A stretch of DNA of 63,099 nucleotides, filler included, from Octopus bimaculoides (taxonomy: Eukaryota), in assembly GCF_001194135.2 (NCBI RefSeq). It is 6 parts of 6 records of this genome, joined end to end, with 100 filler letters (N's around TTAATTAATTAA, not from the genome) between each part and the next. Parts side by side here need not be neighbours in the genome. Positions count along the whole stretch, not along the records: positions 18,076 to 39,733 come from NC_068981.1; 5 more parts are not named here. One strand, given 5' to 3'. This document shows positions 17,976-33,560 of this stretch, one piece after another (within the stretch, counting starts at the first letter, position 1; every line of letters starts with the position of its first letter). Below the pieces are notes generated by a model. It saw nothing but the letters and a program-made list of their open reading frames with translations. It searched no databases and was not told where the DNA came from. Position numbers and translations under genes: made by a program.

Positions 17976-18130
17976 NNNNNNNNNNNNNNNNNNNNNNNNN
18001 NNNNNNNNNNNNNNNNNNNTTAATTAATTAANNNNNNNNNNNNNNNNNNNNNNNNNNNNNNNNNNNNNNNNNNNNGAGAGAGAGAGATATGCATTCTTGT
18101 GTGTGAGTCTATTTGTCTGTCTGTCCGTTC

Positions 18131-18179
<49 letters not shown>

Positions 18180-18189
18180 CATATGTATA

Positions 18190-19000
18190 TTTATCTACGT
18201 CTAATTGTTAAAGAGCTCAACTGACGTTAAGGCAAAACACACATCTCAAGTCATATCCGTTACTATGACTGGAAAAATTTAAAGTCTTACGGCTGTTTTT
18301 GGGATATCCCAGAGTATGGGACATTCCGTCATCGGAGACAAAATACGGAAAATGGGAAGGCTATAGATTAATGAAATGACGACAGAGAGGACAAGAGTAT
18401 AGGAATAAGGAGCTGAAAAATAAGAAGAAAGAAAAAAAAATGCTTAAAAGTTCACAGTTCAACTTTCCGATCGTGTAGATGTTAGGCCATTTGTACTTAG
18501 GTGCAATTCTGTTTAAATCCATGCAGGTTAAAGTACTAATAGTGTAAATATCCAGTAATAGATGTAAAGGTATCGACATTCCCTAAGTAAATNNNNNNNN
18601 NNTTTATCTACGTCTAATTGTTAAAGAGCTCAACTGACGTTAAGGCAAAACAAACATCTCAAGTCATATCCGTTACTATGACTGGAAAAATTTAAAGTGT
18701 TACGGCTGTTTTGGGGATATCTCAGAGTATGGGATATTCCGTCATCGGAGACAAAATACGGAAAATGGGAAGGCTATAGATTAATGAAATGACGACAGAG
18801 AGGACAAGAGTATAGGAATAAGGAGCTGAAAAATAAGAAGAAAGAAAAAAAAATGCTTAAAANNNNNNNNNNGATCGTGTAGATGTTAGGCCATTTGTAC
18901 TTAGGTGCAATTCTGTTTAAATCCATGCAGGTTAAAGTACTAATAGTGTAAATATCCAGTAATAGATGTAAAGGTATCGACATTCCCTAAGTAAATGATA
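18190..19000. repeat. ~410-bp direct duplication across a 10-N gap (likely two haplotypes)
   Basis: 18190-18591 and 18603-18996 differ by only a few substitutions. Confidence 0.65.
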
Positions 19001-19025
19001 GCGGAGAAAGAAAAATAAATAGAGA

Positions 19026-19063
<38 letters not shown>

Positions 19064-19302
19064 GAGAGAGTAGGGGAGGAAAGCAAGGATTGGCATTAAG
19101 GATAAAATAAGGTATATAAGAATATATTGTATAAAAATATAGTGTACAAATATAACGAAGAAGATAAATAAATAAAATTAATAGTTGTCGCCAAGCCAAC
19201 ATGGCAGTCCCAAAATTAGGACGAATGCTGCCGTTGATTAGCTCCAAGAGGCTATCGCCTCTAGCTAGCTATGTGACACACGAAACCTGTGTCCTTTATA
19301 AC

Positions 19303-19399
19303 TAAATAAATATCTAAGGGTAAATAAATATCTAAGGGTAAATAAATATCTAAGGTTAAATAAATATCTAAGGTTAAATAAATATCTAAGGGTAAATAA
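19303..19399. repeat. 18-bp minisatellite (TAAATAAATATCTAAGGK) x~5.4
   Basis: Read directly from the sequence. Confidence 0.9.
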
Positions 19400-19689
19400 G
19401 GAAAGAGGTGGAGGTCAAGGAAGTTAAATGTAAAAAACAAAATAAAGTCAAATGAAAGGGATTCAACGAGAATAACAGGAGCCTGTGGTATTCTTCTAAT
19501 CTGTAGGGGTTGGGCAGGAAATCTAGTTGTAAGTGCTTGTGTCCGTTTTATGGCTGTAGAAATATATTTAGCTATGGGGGTATGGGTGTGTTAGGCAGTC
19601 GTGAATGCAGAAACCAGTTGAATGTTAAATTATTTAGGAATGAGAGTTAGAATTGAATATTAGGGGATTTTATTACTCTTTTACTCTTT

Positions 19690-20190
19690 TACTTCAGTTG
19701 CTCTGAATCACTTGGAGAGACTACTTTGAGTATCGGAAAAAATTCTACCAAGGAATTATATAACATAGTAAAACTTACAAAAATATAAGATGATATTTGA
19801 ATTTATCATCGTTGTTTATTCCATTCCAAAAGAAAGGAAATTTGGCTACCACTGAAGTGAACAGTTGTGATACAATTAGAACCGACGTACGCTTAGAGTA
19901 GATTTCTTTCTGCACAACAGTGACTGGACAAAAGTTTATGATACTATGTTAAAATTAGAGAAAGCAGGCGAAACAACATATATGGCAGTTTAGATGAATG
20001 TGTATCATTAAGATCTACAATAACACTTACTAGATTAGGTCATGATAGCAGTGAAATTCTATAATTTATTAAAAAATCAGACACAATGTCCGGATTCTCT
20101 ATATCACCGGATGTAAACTCTTCCGTATAGTTTGGAGTTCCACCAGTAATATTTTTAAATCAAAAATTTTCTTGTCTTCTTATATAAAGC
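19690..20190 (+). pseudogene. Paralogous IL-17 promoter cassette copy 1, with exon 1 and the ATG deleted
   Basis: Aligns by eye (~80%) to 38970-39415 and to 25570-25830, then jumps directly to aaagcgtcagaa (intron-1 sequence, cf. 26138-26149), skipping the whole exon. Confidence 0.7.
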
Positions 20191-20214
20191 GTCAGAATGT
20201 ATCTACAGTAATTA

Positions 20215-20216
<2 letters not shown>

Positions 20217-20245
<29 letters not shown>

Positions 20246-21000
20246 TATCATTATTCAATTTTTCTTCAAGATTTCTTGCCAGTAGAGAAAGAACCGATTT
20301 CTAAGCAAGATCCAAGGCTCCTCCATTGGAATTTCAATATCAACAACAGGATATATTTGTATGTATGTATGTACGTATGTATGTATGTATGTATGTATGT
20401 ATGTATGTATGTATGTATGTGCAGATTTGTATGTTTTGTGTAGGTATTCTCATGCATATAGTTGCATATCTAGACATGTTCATATATATTTACAAATAAA
20501 CTTCTGAAAAGTTTTACAGATTTTTACAGTTTCAGTGATGGATTGGATCTGTAGTCTTCGAATTAGCTTTCTACTTTCTGATTTTGAGAAGCCTAAATTC
20601 TCAAGATTGATATTTAGGCAGTGTGTTACATACCCCAGGTCCCCAATAATTACAGGTATAAACCTGAACTTGTAATCTGAATAGAGTAACTGTAGATTTC
20701 TCAATAGTTTAGAATAGGTGTTCTCTTTTTCACTGATCTTCAGCTTTATGTTAGCTTCCGCTTGGCAGCTAATTTCCACAACTGTGCACTGTTTCTCTTC
20801 TCTATCCCAAATCCTTATATCAGGTCTGTTGTGCTAGCTTTTGATTGAGGTCTTCACTGGTACATCCCTCCAGTATTCCTTTTAATTGAGCAGCTATGGT
20901 TTCTGCCATATTGTGGGTTCTTATTTCTTTGTCCGACGGATTTCATTATAGAGTGCCCTAGCTACATCATGTCTCATTGTTTGACAGTAAAGATACAATC
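20217..21000 (-). mobile_element. R4-like REL non-LTR family 2, 3' fragment with (CATA)n tail
   Basis: ORF 20480-20779 (EISC...KENTY..LLRNLQLLY...FIPVIIGDLG) and RHDVARALY upstream. Confidence 0.88.
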
Positions 21001-21374
21001 AGCTGTGCCCCTGGAGGAACGAACACCACACTGAGATTCAAACACTATATTTGGAACTATAAAGGTTTTTAAACGTTCTAACAAAATAAGAGCAAGTACC
21101 TTTCCAACCACAGACAAAAGCGAAATCTCACGAAAATTACCACACAGATTCTTTGGTCTCGATTTCTACAAGGAGATTAAAATGGCATCAATCCAATCTT
21201 AAGGCACTTTCTCAGTTCTCCAACAGTGACGATTTAATATATCTAAGAGTCCAAACGTTTTATCACACCCATATTTCAAGACTTCTGCACAGATTTCCTC
21301 AGACCCTGGATACTTATTGTCATTCAGCTTATTCACAGCTAAATAAATGTCATTTAGAGTTGGTTCAAATGCCA

Positions 21375-22189
21375 TCTCTTCTATAATTGGAAGGTGTAAA
21401 ATTTTTCCGTCGTCCTCATGTCAACAGATGATTGTCTATTCAAAAGTGCAGTCAAATGTTCTACCCAACGCTTATGAATAGAAGTGGTGTCAGTCAGAAG
21501 AAAACGTCCATTTGCTGTTCTCACTGGAGTTATTGAAGAAGATTTTGGGCCATATACCTCCTTAGCATAAAAGTACAAACTCTTGGCATCATTTCTATCA
21601 GCTGCTTCTTGTGACCCTTTTGCTCTATCATTCCACCATTCCTGTTTAATTTTCCTTAGAGCAGCCTGCACTTTCCTTTTCAACTTTCTGTAAGTTTCGT
21701 TTGAGTTGGGGTTCAAGGACTGAGAAAGAAGTGTATTGCTTTAGTTTTGTTTTTCTAAAAGTAGATCATGAATTTCTGCTGATCTGTTTGAGAACCAGTC
21801 ACTGGATTTATGAGATTTAAATCCCACTGACGAACTTGCAGCCGCAAATCCTTTTGTTTTGAAATCTTCCACTGATTGTTTGGGTCAAGATTGATACTTT
21901 CTATAGCATTGTGGAATCTTGGCAAGTTGATTGATAATTTAAACTTTTCAACATTTAAGTTTTTGGGTGCCTTAGGACTAGACTGTTGATTTTTAGGCAT
22001 TATCGAAAAATCTATTTTTCCACGCAGTAGATGACGGTCAGTCCAGCTCTCTGCCCCTCTCATGACCCGAACGCTAGAAACGTCTTTTATATCACGTTTC
22101 CTGATCAGAATATAATCTATGAGATGCCAATGCTTACGTCTTGGGTGCATCCAGGTGGTTTTAGTTTTATTTTTCTGTTTAGACAGAAT
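21375..22189 (-). mobile_element. RTE-BovB LINE ORF fragment (endonuclease end plus linker)
   Basis: TTWMHPRRKHWHLIDYIL...VMRGAESWTD and WW...AADRND...KEVYGP...RWVEH. Confidence 0.9.
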
Positions 22190-22334
22190 NNNNNNNNNNN
22201 NNNNNNNNNNNNNNNNNNNNNNNNNNNNNNNNNNNNNNNNNNNNNNNNNNNNNNNNNNNNNNNNNNNNNNNNNNNNNNNNNNNNNNNNNNNNNNNNNNNN
22301 NNNNNNNNNNNNNNNNNNNNNNNNNNNNNNNNNN

Positions 22335-22379
<45 letters not shown>

Positions 22380-22589
22380 AATGGAAAGAAATGAAATCTG
22401 AATATGCTGAACACTTTATCGGAGATGTAGAATGCGCTCTGTTTGGCGGCAAAACAGAAAACTATTATTTGATGTTTATCTTCTAAAACCACTAAGATGT
22501 ATATCATAACATACTTGTAGCATTGTGTACCTGTTGTACTAATGAATTAAAGATTAATACCGGTCATAAATTTTCTTTTATCAGCACAA

Positions 22590-22915
22590 GTAATTTTGTA
22601 TGGTTAAGAAGCTCGCTTTGCAACCATGTGGTTTTGGGGTTCAATCCCACTACACACCATCTTAAGCAAGTGTCTTCTATATCCTCAATGACTTGTGGGT
22701 GAATTTGGTAGACGGACACTGTATGCAACCTTATGGAACATACATGTGTATGTGTGTGTGTGTATGCACGCGCGTGTGCGTGAGTTTGTGTGTGACTCTG
22801 TGTGTGTGTGTATGTGTGTGCCCGAGTTTTAACAATCCTAGCTTTAAAAAATAAGCACTATTATCGATCCGTTCCATGAAACACATCACAACGGTGTCCC
22901 AGCATGGCCAAAAGA
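22590..22915 (+). mobile_element. tRNA-derived SINE with internal (TG)n
   Basis: A/B-box-like head (tggttaagaagctcgctttgcaacc...ggttcaatccc), core gcaagtgtcttcta...tttggtagacgg, tail ccagcatggcc. Confidence 0.75.
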
Positions 22916-22920
22916 TATCC

Positions 22921-23082
22921 TCCAGTAAATTTCAACAATTCGTTGTACCTTATCTTCATGATTCAAATGTTGTTTCCTTAGAAAATATTTTCCTCGTATA
23001 AAAGCTGTTTACTTATGATTTCACACATTTATTTGTATACTGTAACATCTCTATTTAATATACTTATCCTTTGACTCTTATT
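22921..23082 (+). repeat. Paralogous intron-1 block X (copy in unit 1)
   Basis: High similarity to 27771-27938. Both copies directly follow a SINE 3' end and lie downstream of a promoter cassette. Confidence 0.8.
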
Positions 23083-23184
23083 TTCTCACGGCTGACACAC
23101 TTACTATTTGAATTATTATCAGGTGAAACAATCTTGTGCATTTTGAAAACCTTATCTGTGTGTTTATTATCCCCCCCCCCCACT

Positions 23185-24060
23185 TAACGACGGCGGAGGT
23201 ATTTTTTTTAGTCGTGTTTGTTTGTTTGCCCGTGGACAAGTTATCTCAAGAATCACTTGATGGATTCGGATGAAACTTTCAGGGACGTTTGGCCTTGTGA
23301 TGGGCACGAAGTGCTTAGATTTTGGGATCGATCCGGTACCGGACAAGGATTCTGGACTAGTTGTTATATTTACTTTACTTTACATGATTACAATCTCACA
23401 TTGACTTTCCAGTCTTTCTCAATTATCTCCCTTTAGGCTGTCTCTAAAGTTATTTTCGTTTCTCTATTATTAATTTTACTCCCGTCTCTATCTTAGTAGA
23501 AAGTGATGGATAAAGAAATCAAACTACATAAGCAAACGGCAGCAAAACCGTTCAAAAAATTAAATAACACTAACATATTTTTATAATATATATATTACAT
23601 ATTATACATACAAATTAACACTTTACAATATACTTACACATATACATACATGTCCACATCAATCTAAAACAACAGGAATACTAAAGGAAGGTCGGAATTT
23701 TAGAGAAGAGAAAACCAAAATGTCTCATGCTATTCATTTAAAATTTCCTGAGTAGAAATTATTATTATTACCTCTGCCTTTGAAACTATTTTGAATGGTG
23801 AATTTGTTAACTTTGGCTTGTATTAAGACAAGGATAAACTACTTATTACTGTTACTAAATTTTCTACACCCTCCATCACATTCCATGACTATCATTGGGA
23901 TCGATCAGGTACCAGACGAGTATTCTGGATTATTTTTCTGTTTTTTTTTTACTTAATTTTTGAGAGCGGTTGGCTTCATTTTTAGTATTCTCGTTTGTGA
24001 GAGTAGTCGGGTTTACTCCAAATATTCTCATTTTAAAAATCATCTCCGGTTAATCGTTGA
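23185..24060 (+). mobile_element. HINE/Helentron-like non-autonomous fragments (23185-23350 and 23765-24060)
   Basis: ggcggaggt...gtttgtttgtttgcccgtggacaag...ggattcggatgaaactttcagg and ttattacctctgcc starts; shared gggatcgatc.ggtacc.gac block. Confidence 0.45.
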
Positions 24061-25569: not shown

Positions 25570-25930
25570 TTATTAGACACAACAGTAACCGTGCGAAAAT
25601 GCATAATGTTATGTTCAAATTAGAGAAAGCAGCTGAAAGAGCATATGTCGCAGTTTAGATGACTGTGTATCAATAAGATCTAGTAAAACACTTACTGGGC
25701 TGGGTCATGATAGTAGGGAAATTCTTTATACCATTAAGAAATATTTCCCAGCGTCCGGGTGCATTATATCACCGGATGTAACCATTTCCATGTTATCTAT
25801 TGTTCTGTAAGCTGATATTTTTAAATCATATATTTTCTCATTGTATTATGAATAGCATTGTGTGAGAATCCCAACGGTGGTTTTCAGAAAGATATATAAA
25901 GACAAAAATTCAAGACAGGTGAGTTCATTT
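25570..25930 (+). promoter_or_regulatory. IL-17 proximal promoter (cassette copy 2): ETS site, kB-like sites, TATA, Inr
   Basis: ACCGGATGT at 25771-25779, GGGAAATTCT at 25716-25725, TGAGAATCCC at 25863-25872 and TATATAAA at 25893-25900. Homologous to 19690-20190 and 38970-39500. Confidence 0.65.
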
Positions 25931-26059
25931 CTAAGCAAATCACTTTAAGAAACGAGTAAAATATCTTGCTGCTTTAGTGCATTACTGACTTACAACCGTA
26001 CAGCTCTCATCTTGCTTTCGATTTCATAGAGAACAAACACCACAGTAAAAATAACGATG
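25927..26059 (+). CDS. IL17: IL-17-like exon 1: 5' UTR plus the ATG only (26057-26059), followed by donor GTAAGT
   Basis: TATATAAA at 25893-25900 and Inr-like TCATTT at 25925-25930. No other ATG occurs in the exon. aaaaataacgATG|gtaagt gives a phase-0 junction matching exon 2. The same architecture and spacing recur at 39469-39640. Confidence 0.75.
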
Positions 26060-26974
26060 GTAAGTAGGCTTTACTTTATAATATCTAGCGAATTTTTGCA
26101 TTTTACTCCTTAACTATTTGAGTTTTCTTTCTGAAGTAAAGCGTCAGAATAGCAACAATAATTAAAACCTATGTATGTATCATCATCATTATGATCAATA
26201 TTTAACGTCCGTAGTCCATGCTGGCATATTAAGTTTTCATTTCTTCTATATGGAGATGTGACATATATATATATATATATATANNNNNNNNNNNNNNNNN
26301 NNNNNNNNNNNNNNNNNNNNNNNNNNNNNNNNNNNNNNNNNNNNNNNNNNNNNNNNNNNNNNNNNNNNNNNNNNNNNNNNNNNNNNNNNNNNNNNNNNNN
26401 NNNNNNNNNNNNNNNNNNNNNNNNNNNNNNNNNNNNNNNNNNNNNNNNNNNNNNNNNNNNNNNNNNNNNNNNNNNNNNNNNNNNNNNNNNNNNNNNNNNN
26501 NNNNNNNNNNNNNNNNNNNNNNNNNNNNNNNNNNNNNNNNNNNNNNNNNNNNNNNNNNNNNNNNNNNNNNNNNNNNNNNNNNNNNNNNNNNNNNNNNNNN
26601 NNNNNNNNNNNNNNNNNNNNNNNNNNNNNNNNNNNNNNNNNNNNNNNNNNNNNNNNNNNNNNNNNNNNNNNNNNNNNNNNNNNNNNNNNNNNNNNNNNNN
26701 NNNNNNNNNNNNNNNNNNNNNNNNNNNNNNNNNNNNNNNNNNNNNNNNNNNNNNNNNNNNNNNNNNNNNNNNNNNNNNNNNNNNNNNNNNNNNNNNNNNN
26801 NNNNNNNNNNNNNNNNNNNNNNNNNNNNNNNNNNNNNNNNNNNNNNNNNNNNNNNNNNNNNNNNNNNNNNNNNNNNNNNNNNNNNNNNNNNNNNNNNNNN
26901 NNNNNNNNNNNNNNNNNNNNNNNNNNNNNNNNNNNNNNNNNNNNNNNNNNNNNNNNNNNNNNNNNNNNNNNCAT

Positions 26975-27280
26975 CTGTAGCCATAGTGAAGGTGCATGGC
27001 TCAGTGGTTTGAGCTTCGAGTTTACGATCGTGCGGTTGTGAGTTCGATTCCCGGACCGGGTGCGTGTTGTGTTTTTGAGCAAGAAACTTTATTTCACATT
27101 GCTCTAGTTCACTGTTGTCACTGGTATCAGACTTTGCCTTTCCCTTGGATAACATCGCAGGCATGAAGAGAGGAGGCTCTTGCGCGTGGGTGACTGTTGG
27201 TCTTCCATAAACAACCTTGCCCGGACTTGTGCCTCGGAGGCTAACTTCTAGGTGTAATCCTATGGTCATTCATTACCGAA
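26975..27280 (-). mobile_element. SINE-like element (tRNA-like head at ~26980-27060)
   Basis: Contains a tRNA-like A/B-box motif (ggctcagtggtt...gttcgattcc) and an RTE-like 3' part; orientation uncertain. Confidence 0.4.
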
Positions 27281-27474
27281 AGGTGGTTGGTGGGTATCCT
27301 GTAGCCCATCCACGGATTTGCAATAGAGAATTATGAAGAACCATAATTTGGGAACCTACCAAGACATTACTTGGAGTTCTTCACCAATCTAAGTAATATT
27401 GTTAGCCTGGTGTGCCAACAGGGAGCTTAGGAAGTATTTTGCCCGGATTGTTAATCCCTAACTAATTGTCCCCC

Positions 27475-27526
<52 letters not shown>

Positions 27527-27770
27527 GTCTGTCTGTCTTTGTGCGTGTACCTTTCCGTTTGATTTTATCCCCTTTCCTATCGCTTCACATCCAGTGCTGA
27601 TTTGCTTACGTGCCCCGTACTGAGCGTCTCGCTTAAGAAATCGATAGAATAAGTACCTGGCTTTATCAAATAAGTACTAGTATAGATGCGATCCATGAAA
27701 CTCATCACAGCGATGCCTAAGCAGGACCACAGTCTTGTCATTGGAACATGTAAAAGATGAAAAATTCTCT

Positions 27771-27938
27771 TCAGTAAATTTCAACAATTCGTTGTACTTT
27801 ATCTTCTTCATTCAACTGTAGTTTCCTTATACTATAGAAAATCTTTTCCTCATATAAAAGCTGTTTACATATGATTTCACACATTTATTTGTATACTGTA
27901 AAACCTCTATTTAATATACTTATCCTTTGACTCTTATT
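27771..27938 (+). repeat. Paralogous intron-1 block X (copy in the IL-17 intron)
   Basis: Matches 22921-23082 (cagtaaatttcaacaattcgttgtac ... tatacttatcctttgactctta). Confidence 0.8.
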
Positions 27939-27995
27939 GTCATATTAAATTCCTGTGTCTAGTATTTACATCCATCCATCTATCTATTCATCCAT

Positions 27996-28081
27996 TTGCA
28001 ATCCATACGTTTGCAATCCATACGTTTGCAATCCATACGTTTGCAATCCATACGTTTTCAATCCATACGTTTGCAATCCAT
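27996..28081. repeat. 15-bp minisatellite (TTGCAATCCATACGT) x~5.7 in IL-17 intron 1
   Basis: Read directly from the sequence. Confidence 0.9.
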
Positions 28082-28099
28082 GAATAGGAAATATCGACC

Positions 28100-28939
28100 A
28101 AGTACCTGATATGTAAAAGTGATAGAGATATAGGAAAAGCCGTAAAATGCGACAAGCGATGCAGACTTCGATGAGTTCACTGAAGATATCGCCTACATTG
28201 TAAGCAGTTAACCGAAAATGTCATCACGGTATCATCTACCGATGAGACATGATGAAATCCGTCCGAAGGATAATCCCGAGGACAAAGAAATAAGAACCCA
28301 CAATATGGTAGAGGCCATAGCCACTCATAATGAAAAGGAATACTGATGGAATACACCAGTGAAGACCTGATATAAGGATTTGGAACAGAGAAGAGAAACT
28401 GTGCACAGTTGTGGAAATTAGCTGCCCAGTGGATGTTAACATAAAACTGAAGATCAGTGAAAAAGAGAACACCAATGTTGAACTATTGAGAAATCTGCAG
28501 TTACTTTATCCAGATTACAAGTTCAGGTTTATACCTGTAATTATTGGGGACCTGGGATATGTAACACACTGCCTAAATACCAATCTTGAGAAATTAGGCT
28601 TCTCAAAAACCAGAAAAGAGAAAGTTAATTCGAGGACTACAAGTTTACTCCATCACTGAAACTGTAAAAATCTATAAAACTTTCCAGAAGTTTATTATGT
28701 AAATATATATGAGCATGTCTAGATATGCAACTATATGCATGAAAATAAATACATAAAACATACAAATCTGCACATACATACATACATACATACATACATA
28801 CATACATACATACATACATACATACATACGAACAAAAATACCATGTTGTTCATGTTGAAATTTTAACGGAGTCGTGAATGTAGCTTAGAAACCGGTTCTT
28901 TCTCTATTGACAGGAAATCTTGAAATAAACTGAATAATG

Positions 28940-28960
<21 letters not shown>
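28100..28960 (+). mobile_element. R4-like REL non-LTR family 2, 3' fragment inside IL-17 intron 1
   Basis: KCDKRCRL..EDI.YIVS..PKMSSRYHLPMRHD and ORF 28411-28659; (CATA)n-block-(CATA)n 3' end. Confidence 0.88.
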
Positions 28961-28975
<15 letters not shown>

Positions 28976-29420
28976 CCATCCATCCATCCATACATACATA
29001 CATACATACATACATACATACATACATACATACATACATGCATATATACATACAAAATTACATTCGTACATACATACATTTGTGTGTGTCTGTGTGTGTC
29101 TGTGTGTGTCTGTGTGTGTCTGTGTGTCTGTGTATGCATACATGTATGCATACATAGACACACAGACACACAGACACACACACGCACAAAGACATAAATA
29201 TATAGAGAGAAGCCAACAAATGTTTCTTTCATTATTAGTAGAGAAAGTTATTCACCCTCCTTTTCAGCTTGTGTCTACGACTTGAGGGAAATTCGTGTGT
29301 GTGAAAGATGTCACCTACAAATACTAAACGAATTCCGAATATATATATATCCATACGGACGTATACATACTTACAAGCACACACATACATTCATACATAT
29401 ATACACATTTACATACATAA

Positions 29421-29506
<86 letters not shown>

Positions 29507-29819
29507 ATACACACACACACACACACATACACTCACACACGCATATATATATATTTAAATATATGTAAGTATGTATTAAGATTAGGATTCATATTGTAGG
29601 TACACTGGCGTGCAATGTTAGTGATGTTGCGGGGGTCTGATGGTTTTTAGGGTTTTTCGATATCAGACCCCTCCTCCGAGTTGATTCAATCGCGGTTCAT
29701 CAATTCCTAGCTGACATCTCAATAACACAGGTCTCCCCTCTGCAGCCAAATCCACCTAATGGACTTTCCCTCATCTATCTCTCCAGCATTCCGTGTTTCT
29801 CTCTTTTTTACTCTCTCAG

Positions 29820-29900
<81 letters not shown>

Positions 29901-29933
29901 ATCTATATCTATATATATATATATATAAATTAA

Positions 29934-30090
29934 CGTAGAAAGCTTAATGAAAATATTTCTTATTTTATTACAGGATCTCTTTCAAGTTGTAACCTTTCTC
30001 TTCTTAAACTACATCTTGATTGTATCTTCGGCATCAATTCCAATCCGATGTAAAATACCAACAGACTTAAAAGTTCGCTACGAGAGCTTG
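29934..30090 (+). other. Exact partial duplicate of the IL-17 acceptor/exon-2 start, probably an unmerged contig overlap
   Basis: Appears identical to 30174-30330, ends at a 10-N gap, and the flanking (CTAT)n(AT)n is repeated as well. Confidence 0.65.
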
Positions 30091-30100
30091 NNNNNNNNNN

Positions 30101-30140
<40 letters not shown>

Positions 30141-30213
30141 ATCTATATCTATATATATATATATATAAATTAACGTAGAAAGCTTAATGAAAATATTTCT
30201 TATTTTATTACAG

Positions 30214-30723
30214 GATCTCTTTCAAGTTGTAACCTTTCTCTTCTTAAACTACATCTTGATTGTATCTTCGGCATCAATTCCAATCCGATGTAAAATACCA
30301 ACAGACTTAAAAGTTCGCTACGAGAGCTTGTCCAATGCAACCATTGGCAATCATTTTTTTCTACCAGCTGAAATGGCTCCAGCCGAAAGTAACCAGACAA
30401 CACTGACCGATGGTGATAAAAACTGCCCAACATCGCCTGTATCAAGTGGTGAAATCCGTGAACGTTCCACCTGTCCTTGGTACCTGAATATTACTCATGA
30501 TTCAACAGTTTTCCCTCCATCACGTAGCGAAGCGGTATGTCGCTGTACAGAGTGTGTAGGGTCTACGAGTACCAACCACCAATGTACCACTGTATACACT
30601 AAAATGACTGTCCTGAAACCTACAGGTGAATGCATTGATGGATTGTATGTGTACGAACCACATGTGATTGATGTAGCCACAGCTTGTGTGTGTGCACAGA
30701 GGGAGGATGTCAATGTTGATTGA
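30214..30723 (+). CDS. IL17: Interleukin-17-like cytokine, coding exon 2 (169 codons plus stop; the initiator Met comes from exon 1, predicted protein 170 aa)
   Basis: The translation has the IL-17 cystine-knot pattern: CPT...RSTCPW...EAVCRCTEC...QCTTVY...VL...C.DG...Y...V..ACVC. The N-terminus (M)DLFQVVTFLFLNYILIVSSA is a hydrophobic signal peptide. The exon is preceded by the acceptor tatttcttattttattacAG (AG at 30212-30213), in phase 0 with the ORF. Confidence 0.93.
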   Translation, partial: DLFQVVTFLFLNYILIVSSASIPIRCKIPTDLKVRYESLSNATIGNHFFLPAEMAPAESNQTTLTDGDKNCPTSPVSSGEIRERSTCPWYLNITHDSTVFPPSRSEAVCRCTECVGSTSTNHQCTTVYTKMTVLKPTGECIDGLYVYEPHVIDVATACVCAQREDVNVD

Positions 30724-31209
30724 AATGGAGACGGCTATGAGACGTAGAAATCGACCAACTGCCACATTGTTCAATGCGTGTAACGCAGAAGTTGTTTACA
30801 GTATCATGAAACGTCATGTTGACCACTGTGTGGTTATTATTATTTTCATTTTACTTTCTATTTGCTTTTATATTTAACTTTTTACCATCATGTTTGGTTA
30901 TTTCATATTACTATCTGGGGCATTTTAATAATCAATTACATCAAATCTATATGAGGCACATGAACCGATATGGATCTAACCGAAATTACACATGTATTCG
31001 AGCATTCGAGACTAACATTCATTTGGCAAGTGAGTGGGAACGTATATGCTATGTGCATACGTATGCATATATGCACACCTCATCATTTCTGCATGTTCTA
31101 TTTAATTATATTCTAGTACATATATGCATATACATACATACATACATACATTCGTACATACATTCATACATACATACATACATACACACACACACATACA
31201 TATGTACAT

Positions 31210-32820
31210 ACTTTGAAATTGTATGCCAAGAACATGGATGATATGAAAAAAAGCCTCGACCTGGTCACAACATTTTCTGGTGATGTAGGACTAGAGTTTG
31301 ACCAAGATAAATGTTCATATATGGTTGTGGAACGAGGAAAGGCTAAAAACCACCCTAACAACATCTCCATCAATGGCCTATCTGTTTCTCCAATATCTGA
31401 TGAGGAATCCTACAGATACCTGGGAGTAGATGAAAACGTATCATATGAAGGTACCTGTAACAAGGAACGTGTTACTAAGAAATACAGAAATCGGGTTNNN
31501 NNNNNNNNNNNNNNNNNNNNNNNNNNNNNNNNNNNNNNNNNNNNNNNNNNNNNNNNNNNNNNNNNNNNNNNNNNNNNNNNNNNNNNNNNNNNNNNNNNNN
31601 NNNNNNNNNNNNNNNNNNNNNNNNNNNNNNNNNNNNNNNNNNNNNNNNNNNNNNNNNNNNNNNNNNNNNNNNNNNNNNNNNNNNNNNNNNNNNNNNNNNN
31701 NNNNNNNNNNNNNNNNNNNNNNNNNNNNNNNNNNNNNNNNNNNNNNNNNNNNNNNNNNNNNNNNNNNNNNNNNNNNNNNNNNNNNNNNNNNNNNNNNNNN
31801 NNNNNNNNNNNNNNNNNNNNNNNNNNNNNNNNNNNNNNNNNNNNNNNNNNNNNNNNNNNNNNNNNNNNNNNNNNNNNNNNNNNNNNNNNNNNNNNNNNNN
31901 NNNNNNNNNNNNNNNNNNNNNNNNNNNNNNNNNNNNNNNNNNNNNNNNNNNNNNNNNNNNNNNNNNNNNNNNNNNNNNNNNNNNNNNNNNNNNNNNNNNN
32001 NNNNNNNNNNNNNNNNNNNNNNNNNNNNNNNNNNNNNNNNNNNNNNNNNNNNNNNNNNNNNNNNNNNNNNNNNNNNNNNNNNNNNNNNNNNNNNNNNNNN
32101 NNNNNNNNNNNNNNNNNNNNNNNNNNNNNNNNNNNNNNNNNNNNNNNNNNNNNNNNNNNNNNNNNNNNNNNNNNNNNNNNNNNNNNNNNNNNNNNNNNNN
32201 NNNNNNNNNNNNNNNNNNNNNNNNNNNNNNNNNNNNNNNNNNNNNNNNNNNNNNNNNNNNNNNNNNNNNNNNNNNNNNNNNNNNNNNNNNNNNNNNNNNN
32301 NNNNNNNNNNNNNNNNNNNNNNNNNNNNNNNNNNNNNNNNNNNNNNNNNNNNNNNNNNNNNNNNNNNNNNNNNNNNNNNNNNNNNNNNNNNNNNNNNNNN
32401 NNNNNNNNNNNNNNNNNNNNNNNNNNNNNNNNNNNNNNNNNNNNNNNNNNNNNNNNNNNNNNNNNNNNNNNNNNNNNNNNNNNNNNNNNNNNNAGGGTTC
32501 TCAAAACCTGAAAGAAAAAGGCTGATTAGAAGACAACAGATTCAAGCCATCAATGGAACTGTAAAGATATGTAAAACTTTCCAAAAATTTAGCACATAAA
32601 TACATATGCATGCATCTAGACATAAAAACCCATCCATAAAACAAACATACAAATCTGCGCATACACTAACACCAAATACTGCACACACACACACATATGC
32701 ACAAATACCTAGATGATGTTGATAAAAGTTCCAATGAAGGAGCCTTGAATCTATGTTAGAGTCCGGCTCTTTCTCTATGGACAAGAAATACAGAAATGAA
32801 ACTGATTGATAACATACATA
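31210..32820 (+). mobile_element. R4-like REL non-LTR family 2, 5'-truncated in RT, ~490 bp after the IL-17 stop
   Basis: LKLYAKN...GLEFDQDKC...YRYLG before the gap and GFSKPERKRLIRR...VKICKTFQKF after it; preceded by (TACA)n. Confidence 0.88.
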
Positions 32821-32839
32821 CACAAACACACACGACACA

Positions 32840-33560
32840 CACGCACATATTTATGTAAATATCGATCTCTGTATAACGACAAGGAGCGGTAACTTACAGG
32901 AATGACATTCACTATTTCAAGCTATGCTGGAGCTCTTCCGAACTGGTGCTGTTAAGCACCTCCGTAGTTTTCTTCTTCACCTCTTCCACATCTGCAAATT
33001 CCTTCGCATCTACCTTCGTCACTAGTGAAGGTAAAAAAAGTCATTGAGCAACTTCCTGTAATTCTTGCATCTCACATCACGTGACTGCTTTGGATCTTTC
33101 GTGTAAGCGAAGCACGAATTTTGCTGTAACTATTTTCCTTCGAAATTCCCCGTTCAAAATTCGTCAGCAGGAGCTCCAGGACATACTAGTTATATCAACA
33201 AGTTTTTCAATCCTTCGGTGACGGTCCTCCAAGATCAGTTCATTGAATTTTCATTGTGTTTTTCATTGTGTTTTTCATTCGTTCGGGAGGTCAAGGAACG
33301 TCCTGAACGAGATCGGTCTTCAAGCGACAAGTGACCATTCCTAAAGCGTGGAAACCACTCATAAACTTGTGTTTTGCCCATGGCAGCATCCTTGTAAGCT
33401 GCTTGAAGTATGACAACTGTTTCCACCGCCGTTTTCCCCAGCAGAAAACGGAATTTCAAGGAGGCAAGCAATTCCGTTGTTTCAGTCATCGCAAAAATTG
33501 ACGAAAAGGCAAGTAAGTGTGCAAAACAAAAGCGTACCACGTGGCAGTACGACTAGACGC
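32840..33560 (-). mobile_element. Tc1/mariner transposase N-terminal remnant
   Basis: LKFRFLLGKTAVETVVILQAAYKDAAMGKTQVYEWFPRFRNGHLSLEDRSRSGR (mariner HTH). Confidence 0.88.

What the first reader, a model, noticed from the sequence alone, without database searches (positions are those of the whole stretch)
25893..30723. The IL-17 gene has a hidden start-codon-only first exon 4.15 kb upstream; the ORF-finder start is intronic
Seen in the sequence: the ORF's first nine codons (MKIFLILLQ) are the pyrimidine tract and AG of a splice acceptor. Upstream lie TATATAAA, an Inr 32-34 bp later, a 133-nt exon without other ATGs, and then ATG|GTAAGT in phase 0. Splicing gives MDLFQVVTFLFLNYILIVSSA-SIP..., a clean signal peptide. 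Inference: single-exon annotation would give the wrong N-terminus and miss the real promoter. The ~4.15-kb intron is filled with a SINE, an R4-like LINE and satellites.
Basis: partly seen in the sequence, partly recalled or inferred. Interest (0 to 1): 0.75.

Follow-up and report, generated by a model that had tools for sequence, protein, structure and literature searches.

The report
Octopus IL-17 gene, start-codon-only first exon
An octopus interleukin-17 gene is made of two exons, the first ending with nothing but the ATG start codon; transcripts confirm this, but the neighbouring copies of the gene are already annotated the same way, so it is a correct gene-model fix and not a new kind of thing.

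Summary
Transcript contigs from five runs in two studies join 26059 directly to 30214 (…AACGATG|GATCTC…, GT–AG intron, phase 0). None of the eight RNA runs examined covers the intronic "MKIFLILLQ" stretch. The product is the 170-aa precursor MDLFQVV…SSA|SIP… with a Pfam IL17 domain.

The window is Octopus bimaculoides chromosome CM046601.1, inside a tandem IL-17 array. The paralogs on either side, and an O. sinensis relative, are already annotated by NCBI with the same ATG-only exon 1. More distant octopod paralogs have the same phase-0 intron after four or five codons. The architecture is therefore known. What is new is that this gene appears in neither form among about 15 billion public proteins.

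Three corrections apply:
- The 10-N gap at 30091-30100 is flanked by a 230-nt, 100 % identical overlap (29861-30090 = 30101-30330). This is almost certainly an assembly artefact, so the acceptor appears twice and "4.15 kb" is only nominal (about 3.9 kb, including an estimated 688-N gap).
- Either N-terminus would give the same mature protein.
- The SINE and R4-LINE labels could not be verified.

The start site near 25927 is supported only indirectly: TATA and Inr are conserved, and the longest contig starts at 25935.

The parts
25893..25900 (+). TATA box (TATATAAA) of the predicted core promoter
   Evidence: Read directly from the sequence. TATATAA is conserved in the two flanking paralogs. 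Its function was not tested.
25925..25931 (+). Initiator-like TCATTTC; predicted transcription start at A 25927
   Evidence: TCATTT is invariant in three paralog promoters at the same spacing from the TATA box. The longest RNA contig (X5) begins at 25935, and nothing lies upstream of it. The start site itself is not mapped.
25927..26059 (+). Exon 1: 130-nt 5' leader plus the ATG start codon (26057-26059)
   Evidence: RNA contigs cover 25935-26060. There is no other ATG, and an in-frame TAG lies upstream. The context is A at -3 and G at +4.
26060..30213 (+). Phase-0 GT-AG intron. The nominal length is 4154 nt, which includes 698 N and an artefactual 240-nt repeat unit.
   Evidence: The junction 26059|30214 is present in RNA contigs of X1, X4, X5 and X33. 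The intron is colinear with the paralog's intron. Its content is microsatellites and interspersed repeats.
26284..26971 (.). Assembly gap of 688 N (estimated length) inside the intron
   Evidence: Both flanks match the paralog's gene in the same order.
29861..30090 (+). Left copy of a 230-nt, 100 % identical overlap that ends exactly at the 10-N gap. It is most likely an unmerged contig end and not real sequence.
   Evidence: The upstream paralog has a single copy. The two other 10-N gaps in the piece show the same pattern.
30187..30213 (+). The ORF-finder's 'MKIFLILLQ': polypyrimidine tract plus the AG of the 3' splice site. It is intronic.
   Evidence: RNA depth is zero here in eight runs. 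The ATG is ATA in the P0001 gene. The initiation context is poor, with T at -3 and A at +4.
30214..30723 (+). Exon 2 coding part: codons 2-170 plus TGA. It holds the rest of the signal peptide (predicted cleavage SSA|SIP) and the IL-17 domain.
   Evidence: Pfam PF06083, E = 3.4e-13, 50.2 bits against a cut-off of 24. RNA contigs match with 0 mismatches.
30724..31041 (+). 3' UTR, minimum extent seen in RNA contigs. The true end is unknown because contigs break at the (ACAT)n microsatellite.
   Evidence: No AATAAA or ATTAAA was found in 30724-31500.
39404..39634 (+). Promoter and exon 1 of the next tandem paralog (the gene encoding P0004). Its ATG-only coding part is at 39632-39634.
   Evidence: 84 % identical to 25815-26160. 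Maps to L002. NCBI's model splices ATG|gtaagt … cag|GAT.

Best explanation
This is an expressed two-exon interleukin-17-like gene of Octopus bimaculoides (chromosome CM046601.1, at about 24.995-25.000 Mb), lying in a tandem IL-17 array.

Transcription most likely starts at a TATA and Inr core promoter near 25927 (inferred). Exon 1 is a roughly 130-nt leader that ends in the ATG (shown). A phase-0 GT-AG intron of about 3.9 kb, whose length is uncertain, is removed (shown). Exon 2, from 30214, supplies codons 2-170 (shown).

The product is a 170-aa precursor. Its first 21 residues (MDLFQVVTFLFLNYILIVSSA) look like a signal peptide (inferred), and the rest is a secreted IL-17 cystine-knot cytokine.

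The 'MKIFLILLQ' start of the naive ORF is the translated pyrimidine tract of the 3' splice site.

The ATG-only exon is the state shared by one subfamily (the 'MD…' proteins of O. bimaculoides and O. sinensis). Other octopod IL-17 genes have the homologous intron after codon 4 or 5.
For: Junction:
- X1's 728-nt contig maps to 25956-26060 and to 30213-30809, the latter with 0 mismatches. X4's 246-nt contig maps to 25985-26060 and 30213-30384.
- X5's contig maps to 25935-26060 with 0 mismatches and to 30213-30329. X33's maps to 25975-26060 and 30213-30488.
- Loose ends read ATCTCTTTCAAG… after 26060 and …AAAAATAACGAT before 30213.

No read-through: depth is 0 at 30165-30206 in X1-X7 and X33.

Not a retrocopy: four DNA runs cover intron and exon contiguously at the acceptor, with no loose ends.

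Identity: Pfam IL17. The best relatives are 'interleukin 17-like protein' of O. bimaculoides and O. sinensis, at 82-87 % identity.

Locus: L001 20146-23263 is 100 % identical to window 18076-21193.

Same architecture in paralogs:
- P0001, P0004 and O. sinensis P0005 all read ATG|gtaagt…ttattacag|GAT.
- The P0001 transcript shows the same junction in X6 and X7.
- Others read MNTTN|, MKITS|, MKSFQ|, MNIKN| (Argonauta) and MLYK|.

Promoter motifs are conserved across three paralogs.
Against: - The transcription start is not mapped. The longest contig stops 8 nt short of 25927. A TATA box at -34 is slightly further from the start than the usual -30/-31.
- The runs are labelled 'RNA?' (a guessed kind), and Logan contigs show presence, not absence. 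A rare unspliced or alternative 5' isoform cannot be excluded.
- Raw-read RNA runs X13 and X14 gave no reads on exon 1, so there are no read-level counts.
- The signal peptide was judged only by hydrophobicity and the -3/-1 rule, not by a trained predictor.
- The n-region 'MD' lacks a positive charge.
Confidence: 0.93

Rival explanations
1. The gene is a single coding exon. Translation starts at the ATG at 30187 (MKIFLILLQ…), from a promoter inside what is here called the intron.
For: An uninterrupted 178-aa ORF exists. Its N-terminus MKIFLILLQDLFQVV… is also hydrophobic enough to act as a signal peptide with the same SSA|SIP cleavage. The same intronic ATG is present in the P0004 gene.
Against: - No RNA contig covers 30165-30206 in eight runs, and every contig reaching 30213 is spliced to exon 1.
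- The ATG is ATA in the P0001 gene.
- The initiation context is poor.
- NCBI models of three close relatives all use the upstream ATG.
Confidence: 0.02
2. The splice is real, but 25927 is not the start. Either the transcript has one or more further non-coding exons upstream, or it starts elsewhere in the 25.9-kb region.
For: - The start site is only inferred. Contig 5' ends lie at 25935, 25956, 25975 and 25985.
- Some paralog models (P0002, P0003) carry other 5' exons joined to the same acceptor.
- A CAG|GTGAGT-like string lies at 25917-25925.
Against: - TATA and Inr are conserved at fixed spacing in three paralogs, whereas the CAGGTGAGT string is unique to this copy.
- No contig carries a loose end upstream of 25935.
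- The upstream paralog's contig in X7 extends about 125 nt before the junction, which is also just short of the homologous Inr.
Confidence: 0.08
3. The 230-nt repeat around the 10-N gap is a real tandem duplication. The intron would then contain a truncated extra copy of the acceptor and the start of exon 2.
For: The assembly shows two copies. Laying DNA-run contigs over the left copy did not decide the matter.
Against: - Identity is 100 % over 230 nt. One copy ends, and the other begins, exactly at the gap.
- The other two 10-N gaps in the piece have the same 98-100 % duplicated flanks.
- The paralog has one copy.
- RNA runs straight from …GAGAGCTTG into TCCAATGC.
Confidence: 0.07

Closest known systems
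NCBI gene models of the flanking O. bimaculoides IL-17-like genes (proteins P0001 and P0004 on CM046601.1) and O. sinensis P0005
   Same: - Exon 1 carries only ATG, followed by gtaagtag.
- The acceptor is ttattttattacag|GAT.
- The N-terminus is MD(L/V)(F/S/P)QVV…IVSSA|SIP.
- There are two exons, and the genes lie in the same tandem array on the same strand.
   Different: - This gene's protein is 82-87 % identical to them.
- It is in neither form in the public protein collection.
- Intron lengths differ: 2726, 3288 and 7469 nt against about 3.9 kb here.
Other octopod IL-17-like genes (P0011, P0013, P0019 and the L008 gene of O. bimaculoides; P0027 of Argonauta hians)
   Same: Two coding exons. 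A phase-0 GT-AG intron lies at the homologous point of the signal peptide. Exon 2 starts at the residue aligned with D2 of this protein.
   Different: Their exon 1 encodes 4-5 residues (MNTTN, MKITS, MKSFQ, MNIKN, MLYK) rather than M alone.
'Start codon introns' (Nielsen & Wernersson 2006, PMC1626468)
   Same: [quoted passage not shown] The paper also reports a phase-0 peak at position 5 in Drosophila signal-peptide proteins.
   Different: In that survey the codon-1 peak is typical of short, lysine-rich proteins without signal peptides, such as ribosomal proteins. Here the protein is a secreted cytokine.
Mollusc IL-17 expansions (Saco et al. 2021, PMC8353272; Albertin et al. 2015 as cited there)
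   Same: - Tandemly duplicated IL-17 genes in O. bimaculoides (31-36 genes).
- Two exons as the commonest structure in mussels.
- The CPW motif.
- A warning that signal-peptide exons are often missed in annotation.
   Different: That work does not describe the octopus exon structure or this gene.
Vertebrate IL17A/IL17F genes (own knowledge, not tested here)
   Same: Secreted cystine-knot cytokines in which a short first coding exon carries the start of the signal peptide.
   Different: Vertebrate genes have three exons and several codons in exon 1. No orthology is implied.

Membership tests
Interleukin-17 family (Pfam PF06083) | Significant match to the IL17 domain model above the curated cut-off | tested here: met
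   E = 3.4e-13, 50.2 bits against a cut-off of 24, covering profile positions 1-80 of 81.
Interleukin-17 family (Pfam PF06083) | Conserved cysteines of the knot, and the invertebrate 'CPW' motif | tested here: met
   STCPWYL with C88. RC-x-x-C at 110/112/115 and CVC at 159/161. The CPW motif is described in PMC8353272. Disulphide connectivity was not tested.
Interleukin-17 family (Pfam PF06083) | Secretory signal peptide | tested here: inconclusive
   A 21-residue hydrophobic N-terminus (mean Kyte-Doolittle hydropathy 1.66) with S at -3 and A at -1. 'SSA|SIP' is conserved in paralogs. No trained predictor or experiment was available.
Interleukin-17 family (Pfam PF06083) | Binding to an IL-17 receptor and pro-inflammatory signalling | not testable with these tools
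   Needs biochemical or cell assays.
Start-codon intron (ATG-only first coding exon) | In the mature transcript, the ATG is the last three bases of exon 1 and is joined to codon 2 | tested here: met
   Contigs read …AACGATG|GATCTCTTTC… in X1, X4, X5 and X33.
Start-codon intron (ATG-only first coding exon) | Canonical GT-AG boundaries, phase 0 | tested here: met
   GTAAGT at 26060 and TTATTACAG at 30205-30213.
Start-codon intron (ATG-only first coding exon) | This ATG is the first in the transcript, and no in-frame extension is possible | tested here: met
   There is no other ATG in 25849-26056, and an in-frame TAG lies 10 codons upstream. This holds for any start site downstream of 25850.
TATA plus Inr core promoter | TATA box about 30 nt upstream of an Inr (YYANWYY) that coincides with the mapped start site | tested here: inconclusive
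   The motifs are present at a spacing of 34 nt and are conserved in three paralogs. The longest contig starts 8 nt downstream. There are no cap-selected data.

The most novel reading that the evidence does not exclude
The ATG-only exon may be a derived state of one young, fast-diversifying octopus IL-17 subfamily, shortened from an ancestral exon 1 that encoded 4-5 residues. Its nearest tandem copies would be under positive selection in the mature cytokine (dN/dS about 3 against the next gene). The real IL-17 repertoire of O. bimaculoides would then be undercounted, because assembly artefacts hide members such as this one.
Probability: 0.3. Interest if true: 0.3.

Novelty: new member of a known kind. 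Interest (0 to 1): 0.2.

Why it matters
The result yields a correct, transcript-supported model (promoter region, 5' leader, start codon and signal peptide) for an expressed IL-17 paralog that the public protein sets searched here lack. It shows why the gene is missing: an unmerged 230-nt contig overlap and a gap within the gene. It also documents that the octopod IL-17 family shares one phase-0 intron at the very start of the signal peptide, with one subfamily reduced to an ATG-only exon. This helps anyone counting or expressing cephalopod IL-17 genes. It does not change the mature protein, and it reveals no new mechanism.

Tried and rejected
Exons 1 and 2 were therefore laid separately, and the junction was read from loose ends and shared record lengths.
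- Raw-read RNA runs X13 and X14 (about 6 % sampled) gave no reads on exon 1, so there are no read-level counts or strand information.
- The DNA-run test of the 230-nt duplicate was not decisive. Contigs are short unitigs that run over the end of the stretch, and the letters beyond are not shown.
ARAGORN found no tRNA-like sequence. Pfam found nothing in the intron's ORFs, and a six-frame request failed on stop codons. Rfam gave only sub-threshold miRNA-like hits on palindromic microsatellites. The labels remain unverified, although part of the intron (28272-28970) is an interspersed repeat with another copy at about 20218-20942.
- I considered special conservation of the 5' leader and intron start between tandem copies, and rejected it. 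Identity there (92-94 %) equals that of the coding exon (92.7 %).
- The bacterial promoter and terminator scan was not used, because it does not apply to this organism.
Full report
**What is in the sequence.**
- TATATAAA lies at 25893-25900.
- TCATTTC lies at 25925-25931, with its A at 25927.
- From 25927 a 133-nt stretch runs to 26059. Its only ATG is its last three bases (26057-26059), and an in-frame TAG lies ten codons upstream.
- GTAAGT follows directly.
- At the other end, the naive 178-aa ORF (30187-30723) begins ATGAAAATATTTCTTATTTTATTACAG|G, which is a pyrimidine tract plus AG.
- Joining 26059 to 30214 gives a 170-aa protein, MDLFQVVTFLFLNYILIVSSASIP….
- The ORF carries a Pfam IL17 domain (PF06083, E = 3.4e-13, 50.2 bits against a cut-off of 24). 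It also has the invertebrate CPW motif and the RCxxC/CVC cysteines.

**The gaps (tested first, as asked).**
- *Gap 26284-26971.* These 688 N lie entirely inside the proposed intron, so the reading frame is not at issue. Sequence on both sides is colinear with the gene of the upstream paralog. Window 25578-26180, 27655-27941, 29570-29855 and 30101-30856 match L001 9525-10126, 11024-11310, 11621-11908 and 12617-13370 in the same order. This supports the scaffold order.
- *Gap 30091-30100.* This gap is different. 29861-30090 and 30101-30330 are 100 % identical over 230 nt, the first ending and the second starting exactly at the gap.
  - The two other 10-N gaps of the piece are flanked in the same way: 18190-18449 matches 18603-18862 at 98 %, and 18469-18592 matches 18873-18996 at 100 %.
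  - The upstream paralog has a single copy.
  - RNA contigs run from …GAGAGCTTG straight into TCCAATGC.
  - I therefore read this as an unmerged contig overlap. A direct test with DNA-run contigs was not decisive.
- *Consequences.* The acceptor and the first 117 nt of exon 2 appear twice in the assembly (29974 and 30214). The intron's nominal 4154 nt becomes about 3914 nt once the overlap is collapsed, and that figure still contains an estimated gap. The coding sequence lies wholly to the right of the gap and is intact.

**Transcript evidence.** Runs holding exon 2 were found, and their contigs were laid on the two exons separately.

| Run | Contig length | Exon 1 part | Exon 2 part |
|---|---|---|---|
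| X1 | 728 nt | 25956-26060 | 30213-30809, 0 mismatches |
| X4 | 246 nt | 25985-26060 | 30213-30384 |
| X5 (a 2015 study) | 241 nt | 25935-26060, 0 mismatches | 30213-30329 |
| X33 | 360 nt | 25975-26060 | 30213-30488 |

- The loose ends read ATCTCTTTCAAGTTG… after 26060, and GAGAACAAACACCACAGTAAAAATAACGAT before 30213. The one- or two-base overlap is the shared G.
- The mRNA is therefore …AACGATG|GATCTC…, exactly the predicted 26059|30214 junction, with GT-AG ends in phase 0.
- Depth over 30165-30206 is zero in all eight RNA runs examined.
- Four DNA runs cover the acceptor contiguously with no loose end, which argues against a processed retrocopy as the source of the junction.
- In X6 and X7 the contigs that reach 30213 have four mismatches and carry GAGAACAAACATTACAGTAAACATAACGAT. 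That is the exon 1 of the upstream paralog (compared), so the neighbouring gene shows the same splice in RNA.

**Where the window comes from.** L001, fetched for the best protein hit, is from O. bimaculoides GCA_001194135.2, chromosome CM046601.1. Its positions 20146-23263 equal window 18076-21193 at 100 %. Window coordinate x is therefore record coordinate x + 24969167.
- The gene sits between the gene for P0001 (about 18 kb upstream) and the gene for P0004.
- The promoter and ATG-only exon of the P0004 gene are at the end of the piece, with its ATG at 39632-39634.
- Further IL-17 genes follow at 25.06, 25.19, 25.31 and 25.37 Mb.
- Tandem IL-17 expansion in this species is known (PMC8353272, citing Albertin 2015).

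**Is the architecture new?** No.
- NCBI's models for P0001, P0004 and O. sinensis P0005 resolve uniquely into ATG|gtaagt … ttattacag|GAT…, with introns of 2726, 3288 and 7469 nt.
- Five proteins of the two species begin MD(L/V/P)….
- More distant paralogs have the same phase-0 intron at the homologous place but with four or five codons in exon 1: MNTTN|VLLQ (P0011), MKITS| (P0013), MKSFQ| (P0019), MNIKN| in Argonauta hians (P0027) and MLYK|.
- The ATG-only exon is thus one end of a family-wide two-exon plan.
- Introns directly after the start codon are a recognised class (Nielsen & Wernersson 2006, PMC1626468). That survey found them mainly in proteins without signal peptides.

**What is new here.** Neither the 170-aa spliced product nor the 178-aa ORF product is in the collection of about 15 billion proteins. 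The best hit to the spliced product is only 86-87 % identical. This expressed paralog therefore seems to have no public protein model. The gap and the duplicated contig end inside the gene are the probable reason; this is my inference.

**Promoter.**
- TATATAA and TCATTT are conserved with the same spacing in the three 'MD' paralog promoters.
- The splice-donor-like CAG|GTGAGT at 25917-25925 is unique to this copy and is therefore probably chance.
- The longest contig begins at 25935, and none has a loose end further upstream.
- The upstream paralog's contig in X7 extends about 125 nt before the junction, which again stops a few bases short of the homologous Inr. Only 30 of those letters are shown, so this is weak evidence.
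- All this agrees with a start near 25927, but it is not a mapping.

**Consequences for the protein.**
- The upstream ATG has A at -3 and G at +4. The intronic ATG has T at -3 and A at +4, and it is ATA in the P0001 gene.
- Both candidate N-termini are hydrophobic and end in SSA|SIP, so the mature cytokine would be the same either way. The practical gain from the correct model is the promoter, the leader and the signal peptide.
- An unspliced transcript would give only MVSRLYFIISSEFLHFTP.

**Intron content.**
- Microsatellites are abundant: (ACAT)n, (CA)n, (TCTA)n and a 15-mer array at 27995-28081.
- Window 28272-28970 is an interspersed repeat with an inverted copy at about 20218-20942.
- Its ORF at 28363-28656 is the same LINE-tail ORF that occurs at 20480-20779 and 32494-32599.
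- I could not verify 'SINE' or 'R4-like'.

**Verdict.** It is a sound gene-model correction for an unannotated member of a known, already similarly annotated family. Scientific surprise is low.

Noticed in passing
window 18190-18996 and 29861-30330: All three 10-N gaps of the piece (18593-18602, 18863-18872, 30091-30100) are flanked by 98-100 % identical duplicated flanks. This suggests a systematic failure to merge overlapping contig ends in this assembly, which can create false partial gene duplicates.
   Followed up: partly
window 30214-30720 compared with L002 (the P0004 gene): Against the next tandem paralog, nearly all coding differences are non-synonymous. dN/dS is 2.5 overall and 3.1 in the mature part (about 31 non-synonymous against 3 synonymous changes; one-sided Fisher p of 0.04 and 0.02). 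Against the upstream paralog the ratio is 0.44. This may reflect diversifying selection between the youngest copies, but the counts are small.
   Followed up: partly
window 25917-25925: A perfect splice-donor-like CAG|GTGAGT overlaps the predicted initiator. It is absent from the two paralog promoters (GTCGATATCATTT there), and no transcript uses it.
   Followed up: yes
window 26049: Contigs of run X33, and probably X1, carry G instead of A in the 5' leader (…CAGTAAGAATAACGAT). This is likely an allelic variant.
   Followed up: no
window 30213 (runs X6, X7): Transcripts of the upstream paralog (the P0001 gene), recognisable by four mismatches and that gene's own exon 1, show the same ATG|GAT junction. 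Their contig depth (18-67) is much higher than this gene's (3-7).
   Followed up: partly
window 20480-20779 (-), 28363-28656 (+), 32494-32599 (+): Three copies of one ORF tail (…EISC…NIKLKISEKEN…FIPVIIGDLGYVT…LGFSK…IRR.QIQ…TVKICKTFQKF). This is presumably the 3' end of one non-LTR retrotransposon family. There is no Pfam match. A weak RVT_1 hit (E = 0.003) lies in the ORF at 31213 onwards, just upstream of the third copy.
   Followed up: partly
window 33238-33540 (-): A fragment of a mariner/Mos1-type transposase (Pfam HTH_48, E = 4e-7) lies between the two IL-17 genes.
   Followed up: partly
window 35064-36411 (-): Two adjacent long ORFs (314 and 122 aa) have no Pfam match. By eye they look like a retroelement polymerase or endonuclease remnant, which is unverified.
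   Followed up: no
window 28760-29580 and 31040-31210: Many sub-threshold Rfam 'miRNA' hits (mir-297, mir-466 and others, all far below gathering scores) fall on palindromic (ACAT)n/(TG)n microsatellites. They are artefacts.
   Followed up: yes
proteins P0002 and P0003 (O. bimaculoides paralogs): Two NCBI models in the same subfamily have long, odd N-terminal extensions joined just before the conserved …SQVV. These may be alternative 5' exons, or leader sequence read as coding. Either way, the 5' ends in this array are annotated inconsistently.
   Followed up: no
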